Positions 12,474-44,475 of a DNA stretch of 64,000 nucleotides are shown piece by piece. How positions within the stretch are numbered: position 1 is the first letter of the stretch; each line of letters opens with the position of its first letter. The position numbers and the translations under genes are program-made. The notes beneath the pieces were generated by a model, which ran no database searches, was not told where the DNA came from, and saw only the letters and a program-made list of their open reading frames with translations. The stretch lies in IMG/VR virus record IMGVR_UViG_3300046507_000667, positions 1 to 64,000 of that record, one strand, 5' to 3'.

Positions 12474-12695
12474 CTGGTGTAGTTTGTATGAATAGTTAAT
12501 TCATAATACTTATATTTTCATATAAGATCAGACTATATCTTTACCCTATAAATAGAGTATTTTCTGTTTCCATTTCACTTGAAATGTACATTATAGTCGT
12601 TGAACGTTCCTCTTAAGAGGCTTCGCTGCTGATCACCTTCATCATTACATGTTAAGGACTTCCAGCAATTAAGAAAATTTAACCACGACAGATGG

Positions 12696-13448
12696 TTATT
12701 TACCAAAAATTTCACTTAAACGTTCTTCAATATTTTCAGTATAGATGATACGATGTAAAGTAATTCCATTATCTTTACAAAAATTGTCTTTTACTGAATT
12801 ACGTTTAATACTTTCACTAAGATTATGGCCTGTAAATGCCTTAGATGTTTGAAAGTGCTGTTTACCATCGAATTCAATTAAGAAATATTCTGTATCCGAT
12901 ACATGTATTGCAAAATCAAAATAGAGTTTCCTATTTTTATCTGATTTACAATTATCAAAATAAACTTCAGTATCAAAAGAAATTCCATTATTTCTTAAAA
13001 ATTCTTCAATAGTTTTAACTCCTTTAGATACTTTAGGCAATTTACCCATATTACACTGTGGGCAACGCCTATTATCTAAAAATTTTATTGGAGCTACACT
13101 ATATTCATGGCCACATACATCGTGCCTAATTTTAATCTTAGTATCATTATTATAGTACTTCTCTAAAAAAGTATATTCAGAAGCATTTGGAAGCAATTTT
13201 ACTTGTTCTTCAAATTGCTCAGGTGTTTTTGCTCTGAGCTTATGAAGTTTCTTATACTTACAAGTAAAGCATCCACCTTTATTCTGAAGAAGGTCATTTG
13301 GACGAGACTCAAATTCATTACCACAAATAGTATGTCTAAATAAAATCTTGACATTATTTTTGATATATGTACCTAAAGCTTCGTACTCTGTACCCCACTT
13401 TTCTTTTAAAGTGTTGCAAAAATCTTCATGTGAAATTTTCTTTGGTAT
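12696..13448 (-). CDS. intron-encoded homing endonuclease (zinc-ribbon repeats + Vsr/DUF559-like PD-(D/E)XK domain); no in-frame ATG
   Basis: frame open from ATA 13448 (IPKKISHEDF): H..CG..F and CxxC repeats, C-terminal IEFDGKQHF; the 166-aa track ORF lacks the first repeat. Confidence 0.8.
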   Translation of the reverse strand: MPKKISHEDFCNTLKEKWGTEYEALGTYIKNNVKILFRHTICGNEFESRPNDLLQNKGGCFTCKYKKLHKLRAKTPEQFEEQVKLLPNASEYTFLEKYYNNDTKIKIRHDVCGHEYSVAPIKFLDNRRCPQCNMGKLPKVSKGVKTIEEFLRNNGISFDTEVYFDNCKSDKNRKLYFDFAIHVSDTEYFLIEFDGKQHFQTSKAFTGHNLSESIKRNSVKDNFCKDNGITLHRIIYTENIEERLSEIFGK

Positions 13449-35480: not shown

Positions 35481-36894
35481 ATGTCAGAAACAGTAAAACA
35501 ACTCCTTTTTGCACAAGCAGTAACTAATCACTTCAATGGTAAGACTAAATCTTTCATTGTAGAAAAAGTTAAAAATAAGACTACAGGTAAAGTTAAGAAA
35601 CGTGTAATCTTTGATGAAAATCCAGACTTTCACTTTTATAAGACTAAGAAAGGTCATGAACTGGATTATGCTGCAAAATGTATTCCAGTCGAGAAAGTTG
35701 AACGTATTGACTGTAAGTATAATCAGTTATTTGAACTAATTGCTAAGATTACTCATAAAGAAGAAGAATATGAGCAAATCATTAGTGAGAATAAGCGTTA
35801 TAAGCTAGCAGGTCTTCATAATGATTATAATATCCATCAGTCAGATGTAGTCTTAGATGACTATCTCATGATGAAATGGGCAAGAGAAAATAAAGATGTA
35901 ACTGAACCAATTGCACTTCATAAGGCATATTTCGATATTGAGGTGGATATCATCAATTATGATGGTTTTCCACAACCAGAAGAAGCGCCTTGTGAAGTTA
36001 ACTTTATTTCATATCTAAGTGATAAGAATCTTATTCTAAATTCATATATTCTCTATAATCGTGAGAATACTAGTATGCGTGAATTCCTACGCAAAGCTAA
36101 AATGGATAAAGAAACTAATTCACTAGATACTGCTTTAGGTAATGAATGGGCATTAAAGGTACTGGAAGAGCATTTCACAGAACCAAATCCTAAGTCAAAA
36201 TCATCAAAGCCACTAAAGGGTCTATGTGTACGAGTCTTTACAAGTGAGCAGGAATTAATCAAAGCTTTCTTTGATGATGTTCATGAAGACAAACCTGATT
36301 TCTTAGGCGGATGGAATAGTCACTTCGATATTCAGACTATTAAATCTAGGCTTGAAAATCATTTAGATGAAAAAGCAGTCAATTTCTTTTGCCCTTCAGA
36401 CTTTCCATTTAAGAAAGTGGATATTCGAAAAGATGAGCATGCTATTGACGTGTCAGATAGAGCGCATGAATTCTCTATCTCAGGCTACACTATCTTCTGT
36501 GACTTATTGTATTACTATGCTTCAATTCGAAAGACTAGTAAGGGTAAGAAAGAATCATGGAAGTTAGGTGATATTCTTCTTGAAGAACTAGGTGAATCTA
36601 AGTTCGAATATGAAGGTTCGATTAAAGATGCAGCATACATGAATTATGAGGCATTCTTAATCTACTCACAGATTGACTCATATCGTCTATATCAGCTTGA
36701 AGAAAAGAATGGCGACGTTGACCTTCTATATGGTATGTCATTGCTTACACATACCCGAATTGAAAAGGTTATGCGTAAGACGATTTCACTGAAGAACCTA
36801 GCAACAACAATGCTATTTGATAATGGTTATGCACTATGTAATAACCATAATAAGTTTATCAAGACCGGAGAGAAGAAGAAATTCCGGGGAGCAT
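35481..36894 (+). CDS. family B DNA polymerase, 3'-5' exonuclease/motif-A subunit, exon 1
   Basis: YFDIEV (ExoI), GWNSHFDI (ExoII), YSQIDS (ExoIII); joins exon 2 as FRGAFVANP; 574 aa spliced. Confidence 0.9.
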
Positions 36895-37678
36895 TAACCA
36901 TAAGTGCTCTTTAAATATACTTAATTGCTGGAAAACCCTCTGCTAAAGGGCAACTAGCAGCTATTTGATCTGCCAAGGTCACACAGAAAAGGTACTACAT
37001 GAAAGAGATCATTTTTAATGATTGGTTGAAATCATTTCTTGATTATGAAATTGATTTCAATGCAGTTAAACCAACACTCATCCGTTTATATGAGGGTGAT
37101 AAATCCTTTGAAGATTTTACAATCTCATATAGTATGAAAAAGGGAGTAATTCCTAATTTCACTATTCGAGAGGATGAATTAAATGGTGTAAAGGGTATTG
37201 TTTTACAAAAAGCAAATCGCCGATCTACTCGACATGTATTTTTACAAGATTTACCGTATAAAGTACGTGCTGTGGAATATAATAAGAAAAGTATGCTATG
37301 GCGTCTTGATCTTTATTATAAAAAAGAATTGTATTACTATCCTAGTGGTGAACGTCGTTATGATCATCGACTTCATTTAGATGGTATCAATGATAATGAT
37401 GAATATTGCTTTTCATATATTCCAAAGCAGTATGAAGCATTTAGTATTATGAAAGGATTTATCGATCCATTGATTATTGATAAACCTAGAGAGAAAGGTC
37501 CAGCTCAAATCAAAAAGAAAGCAGATCAAAAATTCACGAAACGACCCTTGGCGATTAAGTAGTTCAACGACTATTATGTACATCTCAAGTGAGATGGAAA
37601 CAGTATACTCTGATGATATAGTCTGATCTTATGTGAAAGCATAAGTAGGTAGATTAACGACCTACCGACAACACGATG
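36895..37678 (+). mobile_element. group I self-splicing intron (784 nt) in DNA polymerase subunit gene
   Basis: AATTGCTGGAAA, CTAGCAG, GTTCAACGACTA, GATATAGTCT; IGS GTGCTCT pairs exon GGAGCAT; P10 CCATAA pairs TTGTGG; terminal G at 37678. Confidence 0.93.
36999..37562 (+). CDS. intron-encoded protein of unknown function (no clear homing-endonuclease motif)
   Basis: intact 187-aa ORF with AAAGG SD located between intron Q and R elements. Confidence 0.75.
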   Translation: MKEIIFNDWLKSFLDYEIDFNAVKPTLIRLYEGDKSFEDFTISYSMKKGVIPNFTIREDELNGVKGIVLQKANRRSTRHVFLQDLPYKVRAVEYNKKSMLWRLDLYYKKELYYYPSGERRYDHRLHLDGINDNDEYCFSYIPKQYEAFSIMKGFIDPLIIDKPREKGPAQIKKKADQKFTKRPLAIK

Positions 37679-37989
37679 TTGTGGCAAACCCTAACCTGAT
37701 TGCAAAGGTTGGAATTGAGGTTAATGGTTCTAAAACTCATAATATTTTTGAAAATGTAATTGACGAAGACTTGGCTTCACTATATCCGTCTATTATTCTT
37801 TCATCTAATATTGACTCTGAAACTATGATCGGCAAGATCTTAGCTGAAGATGATGATGAGTATTTAGGGCTCTTCGGTGAAATGATTGCTGAAGCTGATT
37901 TAGTATCTATTGGTAATCATTTTCTAAATCTACCATCTTTTGAAGATGTTGTAGAAAATATTGGCGATTTCCTTCTGGAAGAAGCATAA
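37679..37989 (+). CDS. DNA polymerase exonuclease/motif-A subunit, exon 2
   Basis: DEDLASLYPSIILSSNI = PolB motif A. Confidence 0.9.
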
Positions 37990-43318: not shown

Positions 43319-44290
43319 ATGATTATGGCAAAAGCACTAACTCTAGCTGAATTTCAAGAAAGGATTTCAGCAAAATATGACAATGAGTATTCATTAATTT
43401 TCTTCAAAGCACTAGCAGTTAGAGCTCCTATCATTCTTAGACATAGTTGTGGACATGAATTTGAATCTACTTTTCAATCATTTGTAAATGATTCTAAAGG
43501 TAAATGCAAAGTATGCTATTTACAAACTAGTAAAGGAAGACAAAAAGCTCTTACTGAAGATGAGTTAATAAAAAGGCTTATTAATACTGAATATAACTAT
43601 ATATCAGGATTTATTAATACTAAGAAGAAAGCTTTATTTAGACATAGCTGCGGACATGAATTTGAATCTCTACCAAGAGATATTTATAGTAATAAGTCAG
43701 GCTGTCCAAAATGTGCTAATAAAAATAGAGGTAAATATCAAGTTAATAAAAATTATTTAGAATTACTACTATCTGTTGAAGATGGTAATGAATATAAATG
43801 GTTAGATAAGTTTAGGGATAATAAAACACTTACGCTTATTAAACACTTAACTTGCAATAATGAATATAAAGTTCGTCCAAATGATTTTCAACAAGGTTAT
43901 CGTTGTCCATTTTGTTCTGAAAAATTTCCTACAGAATCAAAAAGTGTTAAGCACATAATAAAACGTCTTACCGAATTAAATATTTCTTTCGCTAGAGAAT
44001 TTACTGATTCTAGATGTCGTTTTAAAAATGTGCTTAGATTTGATTTTGCTATTGATTTACCAGATAGCAGGAAACTTTTAATAGAATTTGATGGTAAATA
44101 ACATTTTCATCCCTTAATTAATGAAGATGTATTTGAACTTCAAATTGAAAGAGATTTAGTTAAGAATCAGTTTTGTAAAATATACTCTAAGGAGTATGTA
44201 TTAGAAAGAATTTCTTATAAAGAAAATGTAGAAGATAAATTAGTTGAAATATTATTAAAACACAATCTTGTAGAGTATTGCCGTCATTAA
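43319..44290 (+). pseudogene. intron homing endonuclease (3 zinc-ribbon repeats + Vsr/DUF559-like domain) with premature TAA at 44099-44101
   Basis: IEFDGK*HF versus IEFDGKQHF in the portal-intron paralog; frame continues 62 codons (RD..KNQFC...ERISY) to TAA 44290. Confidence 0.8.
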
Positions 44291-44475
44291 ACTCTCTTAA
44301 TTGCTGGAAACCCTTAAATGGCAATCAGCAGCGAATCTTTTTATGAAGAACGTTCAACGACTATTATGTACTTATCAAATGATAAGGAAACAGAGAGCAT
44401 CGAAAGATGAAGATATAGTCTGGTCTTATATGAAAATATAAGTATGATAGTGTAATAAACTATCGCAACACTAAG

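What the first reader, a model, noticed from the sequence alone, without database searches (positions are those of the whole stretch)
36895..37678. DNA-polymerase intron carries an intact ORF that is not a recognisable homing endonuclease
Seen: a 187-aa ORF with SD sits between the Q and R elements, with its last codons running into the R element. It lacks GIY-YIG, LAGLIDADG, His-Cys and the zinc-ribbon/EFDG..H motifs of its sister introns; the only hint is HLDGINDND, resembling the first half of an HNH motif without the downstream Asn. It has no internal late promoter, so it would be expressed with the early polymerase transcript. It is the only undamaged intron ORF of the three. Inference: a new endonuclease class, a maturase, or non-nuclease cargo such as a competition or anti-defence factor riding a ribozyme.
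Basis: partly seen in the sequence, partly recalled or inferred. Interest (0 to 1): 0.7.

Follow-up and report, generated by a model that had tools for sequence, protein, structure and literature searches.

The report
Unknown protein family riding phage introns
The gene inside this phage's DNA-polymerase intron is real and belongs to a small, undescribed protein family with no detectable structural relative, found again and again inside self-splicing introns (or right beside the same essential genes) of large phages, which makes it the best current candidate for a new kind of homing endonuclease, although no nuclease activity has been shown.

Summary
A 784-nt group I intron (36895-37678) splits the B-family DNA polymerase exonuclease-subunit gene of an uncultured 249-kb jumbo phage related to Yersinia phage phiR1-37. 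A 187-aa ORF (36999-37562) sits in the intron's P6 loop.

The ORF matches no Pfam, PHROG, NCBIfam, PADLOC or PDB entry. An exhaustive HMMER search and a profile search found about 40 relatives. They share a basic core of about 115 aa with invariant R29, S36, E38, D39, S43, N53, G117, R120 and Y121.

AlphaFold models the core confidently (pLDDT about 90). Only phiR1-37 g173 matches it structurally; the best PDB Z is 3.9.

- Intron-borne: eight members lie in the same P6 slot of related introns in polB, RNA polymerase beta and topoisomerase II genes. A ninth lies beside an intron in a primase-helicase gene.
- Free-standing: six lie near such genes.
- In one locus, the adjacent near-identical intron carries an HNH ORF in that slot.

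Most likely this is a new homing-endonuclease family (about 0.45). Catalysis is untested. The window's clade is syntenic next to polB in four phages and lacks a near-invariant Asp. The 'HNH half-motif' is not supported. The host intron also lacks P8.

The parts
35481..36894 (+). polB (exonuclease and motif A subunit) exon 1. It ends after the first base (T) of a Phe codon.
   Evidence: Pfam DNA_pol_B_exo1 E 5.5e-13 and phrog_3011 E 3.4e-54. It is 47.8% identical to phiR1-37 g170. Junction by alignment.
36895..37678 (+). Group I intron, 784 nt, ending in the terminal G at 37678.
   Evidence: Gap-free restoration of the conserved F(K/R/Q)GAFV motif. P1, P10, P3-P7 and P9 read from the sequence and the MFE fold. 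Rfam hit on 37451-37645 at 32 bits. The core aligns 67-68% with the two sister introns.
36898..36909 (+). Internal guide sequence. CCAUAA pairs with the first 6 nt of exon 2 (P10). GUGCUC pairs with the last 6 nt of exon 1 (P1, U.G at the splice site).
   Evidence: Read from the sequence. P1 is recovered by RNAfold.
36916..36921 (+). P3 5' strand UAUACU. It pairs with AGUAUA at 37602-37607.
   Evidence: The pairing covaries with the sister introns: AUUUUCU/AGAAAAU and CUCUCU/AGAGAG.
36926..36959 (+). P4-P5 domain: UGCUGG/CUAGCA and CCCU/AGGG.
   Evidence: MFE fold. The AAUUGCUGGAAA and CAGCAGC elements are conserved in related introns.
36961..36978 (+). P6/P6a 5' strand. It pairs with 37546-37562.
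   Evidence: MFE fold of the ORF-deleted core, stable for three different deletion end points.
36988..36992 (+). Shine-Dalgarno-like AAAGG, 6 nt before the ATG.
   Evidence: It is not sequestered in the local fold.
36999..37562 (+). Intron ORF, 187 aa plus stop.
   Evidence: The identical protein is found on 6 contigs from related rhizosphere samples. The two SNPs seen in other runs (37331, 37430) are both synonymous.
36999..37364 (+). Conserved core domain, residues 1-122: one helix followed by nine strands.
   Evidence: Relatives cover residues 11-124. The profile hit on this genome is E 2e-28. AF2 pLDDT is about 88-95 over residues 20-120.
37365..37559 (+). C-terminal extension of 65 aa, unique to this copy. 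It is basic and includes HLDGINDND.
   Evidence: It aligns to no relative. pLDDT is 40-60. Only sub-threshold Pfam hits.
37546..37562 (+). P6/P6a 3' strand. It lies inside the last codons of the ORF and its stop codon.
37562..37574 (+). R element: J6/7 plus the P7 5' strand (GUUCAACGACUAU).
   Evidence: Rfam alignment. Invariant in related introns.
37581..37596 (+). Hairpin CAUCUC-AAGU-GAGAUG, lying between P7 and P3' (a P7.1/7.2-type element).
   Evidence: MFE fold. It is conserved in the sister introns.
37608..37612 (+). CUCUG linker at the place where every related intron has the P8 hairpin.
   Evidence: Alignments with 6 and then 10 related introns. The seven other introns hosting this ORF family in the P6 slot all keep P8.
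37613..37623 (+). J8/7 plus the P7 3' strand (AUGAUAUAGUC, the S element).
37628..37666 (+). P9 (CUUAUG/CAUAAG) and a further P9.x hairpin (GGUAG/CCUACC).
37679..37989 (+). polB exon 2. It carries motif A (DEDLASLYPS).
   Evidence: Pfam DNA_pol_B (weak) and phrog_3011 positions 470-562. Alignment.

Best explanation
The ORF encodes a divergent member of an undescribed, basic protein family with a core of about 115 aa. The family's niche is the P6 loop of one lineage of phage group I introns, and intergenic spots beside the same essential replication and transcription genes.

The most likely function is that of a homing endonuclease of a new structural type. In a mixed infection it would recognise the intron-less polB allele around GGAGCAT|TTGTGG and cut or nick it. 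Repair from the intron-bearing genome would then copy the intron, the ORF and flanking exon markers into the rival genome, or cripple the rival.

Shown here:
- the gene is real and conserved;
- the intron's limits;
- the ORF's P6 position;
- the family's repeated association with introns and essential genes;
- the absence of any known fold or motif.

Inferred:
- DNA binding, from pI about 9.5 only;
- cleavage and target site, with no direct evidence;
- the catalytic residues. Candidates are the invariant or near-invariant E38, D39, K71 and H79.

The window's copy also carries a unique 65-aa basic tail that reads into the P6 3' strand.
For: 1. It is a real family.
- phmmer over 1.84 billion representatives gives 5 relatives, down to E 6.8e-11.
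- A profile search gives 36.
- Invariant columns are R29, S36, E38, D39, S43, N53, Y113, G117, R120 and Y121.

2. Its distribution looks like that of homing-endonuclease genes.
- Eight members end 0-36 nt before the R element of related group I introns. Two lie in polB at two different sites (the window and L015/16). Four lie in RNA polymerase beta-subunit genes (L030, L023, L024, L043). One lies in topoisomerase II (L018). For L035 the host gene was not identified.
- One lies between the halves of a primase-helicase gene, next to a complete intron core.
- Six are free-standing with no intron elements around them. They sit next to polB (L009, L033, phiR1-37 g173), topoisomerase II (L017) or an intron-rich gene (L037/38, L044).

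3. Interchangeable cargo. In L043 the neighbouring, nearly identical intron carries an ORF with a weak HNH_3 Pfam hit ending 26 nt before its R element. The family member ends 27 nt before the next intron's R element.

4. The insertion site is inside the conserved F(K/R/Q)GAFV motif of polB. Mobile introns typically insert at such sites (own knowledge).

5. The intron keeps P1 with U.G, P10 and the terminal G, and restores the frame exactly.

6. All members are basic, median pI 9.5.

7. The only two SNPs in the ORF across samples are synonymous.

8. In run X4, a minor exon-1 allele differs at 19 sites between 36539 and 36782, yet shares one unbranched contig from 36783 through the intron and ORF. 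This is compatible with recent transfer of the intron region.
Against: - No nuclease fold or motif was found. Foldseek against PDB gives nothing below E 0.1, VIA best Z is 3.9, and AFDB and Atlas give nothing. The weak neighbours are small beta-barrels and sandwiches, which more often bind than cut.
- A core of 115 aa would be the smallest homing endonuclease known (own knowledge), and the homodimer job gave no verdict.
- The window's copy groups with three free-standing genes of related phages, with weak support. These keep the same place between polB and a conserved 242-247-aa gene. Their divergence (26-34% identity to the window's copy; 56% between P0004 and the L033 copy) roughly parallels that of their neighbours. 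This looks like a resident gene rather than a patchy selfish one.
- This clade replaces the near-invariant D116 (S, T or G) and carries R at position 119, where most members have H. P0004, P0029 and g173 also lack the conserved STRH motif (P0004 and P0029 have D at the H79 column). If D116 is catalytic, this clade is inactive.
- No intron-less allele of this polB was found in the seven metagenome runs.
- No RNA data exist.
Confidence: 0.45

Rival explanations
1. Resident accessory gene of phiR1-37-like phages, possibly a domesticated ex-endonuclease. It would act with the replication machinery, for instance as a DNA-binding factor. In this phage it has merely been relocated a few hundred bases into the P6 loop of an intron that entered polB.
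For: The gene order polB, then the family gene, then the 242/246/247-aa gene, the 281-301-aa gene, the 267-292-aa gene and (in the window, L009 and L033) the RNA polymerase gene is kept in the window, L009, L033 and phiR1-37. The four copies cluster in the tree. Their divergence tracks that of their neighbours. The clade has lost the near-invariant D116, and in three of the four members the STRH motif containing H79. g173 has gained a 150-aa helical tail. More distant relatives (AR9, BpSp, SA1) lack the gene.
Against: Outside this clade the family is mostly intron-borne, in four other kinds of genes. The window's copy sits in exactly the P6 slot used by the other clade. Tree support for the clade is weak (71/59 and 89/21) and the branches are long. 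The window's copy keeps H79 and all ten invariant residues.
Confidence: 0.2
2. Maturase or splicing cofactor. The protein binds the intron RNA and compensates for a defective core, here the missing P8, so that the essential polB mRNA can be spliced.
For: This intron alone lacks the P8 hairpin; a 5-nt linker stands at 37608-37612. Exon 2 carries motif A and has no start signal of its own, so splicing seems required. The protein is basic. Its weak structural neighbours are small barrels of the OB, Tudor or PRC kind. The end of the ORF is embedded in P6.
Against: The closest relatives are free-standing next to polB, whose gene is uninterrupted in L009 and phiR1-37; in L033 it carries only an ORF-less intron that keeps its P8. 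The seven other host introns carrying the ORF in the P6 slot keep P8. Phage group I introns generally self-splice without proteins (own knowledge). Free-standing members overlap the starts of unrelated genes.
Confidence: 0.12
3. Non-nuclease selfish or competitive cargo. Examples are an inhibitor of a rival phage's polymerase, RNA polymerase or topoisomerase, or an anti-defence factor, that uses the intron as a neutral landing pad.
For: No nuclease signature was found. The family is always linked to replication and transcription genes. An intron-borne protein is known to act in phage-phage competition, although that one is an HNH nuclease (PMC11620839).
Against: No match to defence or anti-defence models. 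Nothing explains how such cargo would spread among introns and genes without a DNA-breaking activity. An ORF with a weak HNH hit occupies the same slot in the adjacent intron.
Confidence: 0.1
4. Decaying relic: an ORF that still reads open but has no function.
For: The near-invariant Asp at position 116 is lost. The 65-aa tail is odd and poorly modelled.
Against: All ten invariant residues are retained. A 187-codon open frame in roughly 35% G+C DNA is unlikely by chance. Both observed SNPs are synonymous. The core is modelled confidently.
Confidence: 0.03

Closest known systems
Phage T4 td intron with I-TevI (own knowledge)
   Same: A phage group I intron in an essential nucleotide/DNA-metabolism gene, with the ORF looped out of a peripheral stem of the core and the intron restoring a conserved motif.
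   Different: I-TevI is a GIY-YIG enzyme of about 245 aa with a separate DNA-binding domain. Here the core is about 115 aa, all-beta after one helix, and has no known motif.
Free-standing endonucleases beside their target genes: F-CphI next to psbA in cyanophage S-PM2, and T4 seg/mob genes (PMC6083498 for F-CphI; the rest is own knowledge)
   Same: Family members sit free-standing right beside the conserved gene that, in a related phage, carries the intron with a homologous ORF: L009 and L033 versus the window. This mirrors the proposed route from a free-standing gene to a mobile intron.
   Different: F-CphI uses an Endo VII catalytic motif. No such motif or fold is found here. The free-standing copies here are syntenic in four phages rather than patchy.
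PhiPA3 gp210, the intron-encoded HNH nickase in a jumbo-phage RNA polymerase gene (PMC11620839)
   Same: A group I intron in a multisubunit RNA polymerase gene of a chimallin-encoding jumbo phage. Family members P0025 and P0028 occupy introns in such genes. A role in competition is plausible.
   Different: gp210 is a recognisable HNH enzyme with proven nicking. This family has no HNH hit, and no activity is known.
I-Ssp6803I, a small PD-(D/E)xK homing endonuclease (own knowledge; family list in PMC6083498)
   Same: A very small intron-encoded enzyme that needs oligomerisation to read a long site. That is a precedent for a 115-aa core.
   Different: It has the PD-(D/E)xK fold. The model here matches no PD-(D/E)xK structure, and oligomerisation is unsupported.
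Yersinia phage phiR1-37 g173 (hypothetical protein, 277 aa)
   Same: It is the only structural match: BFVD G4KKB2, E 5.7e-6. The profile hit is E 2.4e-7. It has the same neighbourhood downstream of polB.
   Different: It is free-standing. It has lost R29, S36, D39 and the STRH motif, and it carries a 150-aa helical C-terminal region. Its function is unknown.

Membership tests
Group I intron (Rfam RF00028) | Covariance-model score at or above the gathering threshold (50 bits). | tested here: not met
   The score is 32 bits, E 4.6e-6, and covers the 3' part only. The 560-nt ORF insertion and the missing P8 lower the score. A comparable ORF-bearing intron in L030 reaches 49.6 bits.
Group I intron (Rfam RF00028) | P1 with U.G at the 5' splice site, P10, a terminal G, and exact exon ligation restoring the frame. 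| tested here: met
   U36894.G36904. P10 is CCAUAA/UUGUGG. The terminal G is at 37678. The spliced product aligns gap-free with three uninterrupted or differently interrupted homologues.
Group I intron (Rfam RF00028) | A complete conserved core (P3-P8 domain, P4-P6 domain, P7). | tested here: inconclusive
   P3 (covarying), P4, P5, P6, P7 and P9 are present. P8 is replaced by 5 nt, unlike 17 related introns. Splicing was not observed, since no RNA run was listed.
HNH / His-Me finger endonucleases | A beta-beta-alpha-metal motif with the catalytic His and Asn/His; a Pfam HNH-type hit. | tested here: not met
   No HNH family appears in Pfam for any of 37 members. The model has no helix after residue 20 in the core. 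No His-Me structure appears among the fold hits. HLDGINDND lies in the unconserved tail.
GIY-YIG endonucleases | The GIY...YIG strands with conserved Arg, Glu and Asn; a Pfam GIY-YIG hit. | tested here: not met
   No Pfam hit and no fold match.
LAGLIDADG endonucleases | One or two LAGLIDADG helices in an alpha-beta-beta-alpha-beta-beta-alpha fold. | tested here: not met
   No Pfam hit. The model is nearly all-beta.
PD-(D/E)xK, EDxHD (Vsr-like) and Endo VII-type homing endonucleases | The respective catalytic motif in the respective fold. | tested here: not met
   No Pfam, PDB-sequence or fold match. The family's ED (E38-D39) is followed by F/Y-S/T-I-S, not xHD.
His-Cys box endonucleases | Conserved His and Cys zinc ligands. 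| tested here: not met
   There is no conserved Cys in the family alignment.
Homing endonuclease (functional class) | Site-specific cleavage of the element-less allele. | not testable with these tools
   This needs purified protein and a substrate.
Homing endonuclease (functional class) | Sporadic occurrence in self-splicing elements and intergenic sites of conserved genes, with unrelated endonuclease ORFs in equivalent slots. | tested here: met
   Nine intron-linked and six free-standing contexts, in or beside five kinds of genes. An ORF with a weak HNH hit occupies the same P6 slot of the adjacent intron in L043. Caveat: the window's own clade is syntenic, not sporadic.
Intron maturase (functional class) | The protein is needed for splicing of its own intron. 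| not testable with these tools
   There are only indirect pointers: P8 is missing here, but the close relatives are free-standing.

The most novel reading that the evidence does not exclude
This would be a further structural family of homing endonucleases, beyond the six classical families and the Endo VII-type F-CphI. It would have a new fold and active site in a core of only about 115 aa. It spreads with one lineage of group I introns through polymerase, RNA polymerase, topoisomerase and primase-helicase genes of jumbo and other large phages. The phiR1-37-like clade would capture the step between a free-standing gene beside polB and a mobile intron. A still stranger variant is that the family is not a nuclease at all and mobilises or exploits introns by an unknown route.
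Probability: 0.45. Interest if true: 0.85.

Novelty: new variant of a known kind. Interest (0 to 1): 0.72.

Why it matters
Homing endonucleases fall into very few structural families: six classical ones plus the Endo VII-type F-CphI (PMC6083498). Each new family has brought new DNA-recognition chemistry and, in several cases, tools for genome engineering (own knowledge).

Here a compact, confidently modelled domain with no detectable structural relative occupies exactly the genomic niche of such enzymes. It does so in uncultured jumbo phages, including chimallin-encoding ones, where an intron endonuclease is known to decide competition between co-infecting phages (PMC11620839).

If it cuts DNA, it would be a new nuclease type and the smallest homing endonuclease. 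If it does not, group I introns carry a class of cargo that nobody has described.

The phiR1-37-like clade also offers a natural series: free-standing beside polB in three phages, inside the polB intron in this one. This bears on how mobile introns are assembled. phiR1-37 is cultured, so its gene g173 gives an experimental entry point.

The missing P8 hairpin in an intron of an essential gene is a separate puzzle for ribozyme biology.

Tried and rejected
- Direct searches with the 187-aa protein found nothing. Pfam and PHROG gave only sub-threshold noise: Cas9_PI2 at 0.038, DUF5081 at 0.066 and phrog_7299 at 0.17. tblastn against 50,697 phage records gave no match even at E 10. The word-indexed search found only the protein itself. 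ESM Atlas features gave no usable hit.
- Single-sequence AlphaFold was useless (pLDDT 35). Only the 37-row alignment gave a confident core.
- Fold searches in PDB (Foldseek and VIA-wide), AFDB clusters, AFDB Swiss-Prot and Atlas found nothing credible. Recurrent weak rows (glutamine synthetase N-domain, ATP synthase epsilon, plant B3 domains) have TM below 0.3 and Z below 4, and I do not use them.
- The homodimer prediction of the core (2 x residues 1-126) returned 'no answer' with score 0.00. That is neither support nor evidence against.
- HLDGINDND as half an HNH motif is rejected, for the reasons given above.
- A typical member (P0028) has no tblastn match in GenBank phages. NCBIfam and PADLOC gave nothing. 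IMG/VR and metagenome pattern scans added only a few loci, because confirmation uses one sequence.
- RNA evidence for splicing: no RNA run was listed.
- A search for an intron-less polB allele in seven DNA runs found no joint across 36894/37679. The 28-nt 'between' records belong to other, ORF-less introns that have their own P3 and P8.
- Intron remnants around the free-standing copies: none within 2 mismatches of the P, R or S elements on the coding strand.
- A literature search for P8-less group I introns and for this family returned nothing relevant.
Full report
**Source**

The window is the first 64 kb of a 249,347-bp IMG/VR virus record with direct terminal repeats. It was assembled from rhizosphere metagenomes. 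No GenBank phage is close at the DNA level. The nearest cultured relative by the polymerase gene is Yersinia phage phiR1-37, at 47.8% identity. The Bacillus and Staphylococcus jumbo phages AR9/PBS1, BpSp and SA1 follow.

**The observation**

An ORF of 187 aa runs from 36999 to 37562. AAAGG stands 6 nt before its ATG.

Upstream, a 477-codon frame (35481-36914) matches the exonuclease domain of B-family polymerases. Downstream, a 102-codon frame (37681-37989) carries polymerase motif A.

Joining base 36894 to base 37679 creates a Phe codon and the peptide KKKFRGA-F-VANPNLIAKVG. This aligns without a gap to KKKFQGAFVLDPTMMQKVG of phiR1-37 g170 and to the homologous gene in locus L009.

The RNA features expected of a group I intron are there:
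- P1 is GAGCAU/GUGCUC with the U.G pair at the splice site.
- P10 is CCAUAA/UUGUGG.
- The terminal G is at 37678.
- P4-P5, a long P6, the R and S elements forming P7, and P9 are all present.
- P3 (UAUACU/AGUAUA) covaries with the two sister introns of the window, which have AUUUUCU/AGAAAAU and CUCUCU/AGAGAG.

The ORF lies in the P6 loop. The 3' strand of P6 is formed by its last codons, and its stop codon shares a G with the R element. Rfam scores only the 3' part, at 32 bits and below threshold. The two ORF-poor sister cores score 81-85 bits.

**What the protein is not**

- No family is found in Pfam, PHROGs, NCBIfam or PADLOC, either for this protein or for its relatives scanned one by one.
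- A profile of the family finds nothing in the PDB sequences.
It is no evidence for an HNH relationship.

**What it is**

An exhaustive phmmer run over 1.84 billion cluster representatives returned five relatives of 115-146 aa covering residues 11-124. A profile search raised this to 36, and a further one added divergent 277-aa forms.

The alignment shows a compact domain with these motifs: R-x-(F/Y)-E-x-x-K-S-(Y/F)-E-D-(F/Y)-(S/T)-I-S, then N-F, then K-K-x-x-(R/K)-S-T-R-H-(I/V)-x-F, then Y-T-D-G-T-(H/R)-R-Y. Ten columns are invariant. All members are basic, with a median pI of 9.5.

With this alignment AlphaFold gives a confident core: pLDDT 88-95 over residues 20-120, one N-terminal helix followed by nine strands. 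An independent ESMFold run gave about 80.

- Foldseek against PDB, AFDB clusters, AFDB Swiss-Prot and the ESM Atlas, and an exhaustive VIA-align pass over 48,161 PDB chains, found nothing. The best Z was 3.9, where the tool's typical best for models without a clear Foldseek match is 7-8.
- The single credible structural match is a viral model, G4KKB2 (E 5.7e-6). It is phiR1-37 g173, an unannotated 277-aa protein.

**Genomic contexts of the family**

I read the DNA around 15 distinct members.

*Intron-borne.* Eight members end 0-36 nt before a GTTCAACGACTA R element of an intron of the same lineage, which is the same P6 slot:
- the window;
- L015/16, in polB at a different site (about position 334 of 576);
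- L030/L022 and L023, in the RNA polymerase beta-subunit gene of chimallin-encoding jumbo phages;
- L024 and L043, also in RNA polymerase beta genes;
- L018, between the HATPase and DNA_gyraseB parts of a topoisomerase II gene that holds three more introns;
- L035, whose host gene I did not identify.

These rest.

A ninth member, in L011, lies between the two halves of a primase-helicase gene, just after a complete intron core.

*Free-standing.* Six members have no intron elements nearby:
- L009, 70 nt after an uninterrupted polB;
- L033, 80 nt after a polB that has an ORF-less intron elsewhere;
- phiR1-37 g173, 1.9 kb after polB;
- L017, overlapping the start of topoisomerase II;
- L037/38 and L044, overlapping the start of a 202-204-aa gene downstream of intron-rich genes.

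These rest.

In L043 three nearly identical introns follow one another. The first carries an ORF with a weak HNH_3 Pfam hit in the P6 slot, and the second carries the family member in the same slot. This pattern is the distribution expected of homing-endonuclease genes: intron loops plus intergenic sites next to essential replication and transcription genes, with a likely HNH endonuclease ORF in the equivalent slot. That expectation is from my own knowledge of the T4 seg/mob genes and of F-CphI (PMC6083498).

**A complication specific to the window's copy**

The four phiR1-37-like phages share one gene order. A gene on the other strand comes first, then polB, then the family gene, then genes of 242-247 aa, 281-301 aa and 267-292 aa. 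In the window, L009 and L033 the RNA polymerase gene follows. In the window the family gene is not behind polB but about 430 nt upstream of that spot, inside the intron.

The four copies group together in a maximum-likelihood tree, with weak support and long branches. Their divergence (26-34% identity to the window's copy; 56% between P0004 and the L033 copy) roughly tracks that of neighbouring genes.

The clade has an extra residue and S, T or G in place of the near-invariant D116, and R at position 119, where most members have H. P0004, P0029 and g173 also lack the STRH motif that contains the near-invariant H79 (P0004 and P0029 read STTD). The window's copy keeps it, along with all ten invariant residues. 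AR9, BpSp and SA1 lack the family.

Two readings fit:
- A long-resident free-standing endonuclease gene next to its target was captured by an intron that entered the target site. This is the route proposed for mobile-intron formation (own knowledge).
- A domesticated, perhaps non-catalytic, derivative was displaced into the intron by chance.

**An unexpected feature of the intron**

Between P3' (37602-37607) and J8/7 (from 37613) there are only five bases, CUCUG. All ten related ORF-less introns that I aligned carry a 4-9-bp P8 hairpin at that place. So do the seven other introns that host this family in the P6 slot. The same sequence is present in independent metagenome contigs, so this is not an assembly error.

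Exon 2 carries motif A and has no ribosome-binding site of its own, so the intron should have to splice. This is the one point in favour of a maturase-like role. However, it is unique to this intron while the protein family is not, and the nearest relatives sit free-standing next to polB, uninterrupted in L009 and phiR1-37.

**Population data**

The identical ORF occurs in six contigs from related samples. The only two variant positions within it (37331 and 37430) are synonymous.

Exon 1 shows short, highly divergent alternative patches. One spans 36125-36257, with 18-19 differences. Another spans 36539-36782, with 19 differences, 15 of them at third codon positions. In contrast, a single unbranched contig runs from 36783 through the intron and ORF. 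This mosaicism near the insertion site is compatible with recombination initiated there, but it does not prove it. No intron-less allele and no RNA run were found.

**Verdict**

The protein is a member of an undescribed family with no detectable structural relative, whose distribution is that of a homing endonuclease.

| Reading | Probability |
|---|---|
| New endonuclease family | about 0.45 |
| Resident or domesticated accessory gene | 0.2 |
| Maturase or splicing cofactor | 0.12 |
| Other non-nuclease cargo | 0.1 |
| Decaying relic | 0.03 |

Catalysis, target and oligomeric state are all inferred. The homodimer prediction gave no verdict.

Noticed in passing
window 37602-37623: The polB intron has no P8 hairpin. 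Five bases (CUCUG, 37608-37612) link P3' to J8/7, whereas the 17 related introns examined all have a P8 of 4-9 bp. The gene it interrupts is essential.
   Followed up: partly
window 36125-36257 and 36539-36782: Co-occurring strains in other rhizosphere runs carry short, highly divergent alternative patches in polB exon 1: 18-19 differences in each. In the second patch, the one I checked, 15 of the 19 fall at third codon positions. They are flanked by identical sequence. The stretch 36783-37644 (distal exon 1, intron and ORF) forms one unbranched contig. This suggests mosaic recombination near the intron site.
   Followed up: partly
window 12509-13196 (-) and 43319-44442 (+): There are two sister group I introns (Rfam 84.5 and 81.1 bits). 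Their ORFs lie 5' of the core, not in P6. The ORFs combine treble-clef zinc ribbons (DUF4379, scored for the 43319-44101 ORF; a Cys motif is visible in the other) with an ...IEFDGKQH motif, which is weakly DUF2726-like and suggests a PD-(D/E)xK type. The ORF in the RNA polymerase beta' gene intron stops right after EFDGK and so looks truncated.
   Followed up: partly
L043 1670-4330: Three nearly identical group I introns stand in a row in an RNA polymerase beta (Rpb2_6) gene region of a 149-kb contig. They carry, in turn, an ORF with a weak HNH_3 hit, a member of the new family, and a 166-aa ORF.
   Followed up: partly
L018 4545-8070: A topoisomerase II (gyrB-like) gene is broken by four group I introns. 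One carries the family member P0008, and three are ORF-less (85-98 bits).
   Followed up: partly
L033 1865-2088: A relative of the window's phage has an ORF-less group I intron (56 bits) at another site of polB (269 aa | 292 aa). Its family gene is free-standing just downstream.
   Followed up: no
L011 2476-7054: The primase-helicase locus holding P0005 also has a SegE-type GIY-YIG gene upstream. The helicase half contains an intein (Hint plus LAGLIDADG hits). Mobile elements are stacked densely here.
   Followed up: no
L001 1-1149 and 2869-4599 (phiR1-37 g167 and g170); window 35481-37989: In this phage group the B-family polymerase is encoded as two genes. One encodes the exonuclease domain plus motif A. 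The other, on the opposite strand in phiR1-37 and L009, encodes a separate 'catalytic subunit'. I did not locate the window's catalytic-subunit gene.
   Followed up: no
window 36920-36937 and 37562-37601 (contigs in runs X3, X4, X7): The metagenomes hold ORF-less introns that match these two stretches at about 87% identity, with only 28 nt between them. They have a different P3 and an intact P8. They are other members of the same intron lineage, not an ORF-less allele of this locus.
   Followed up: partly
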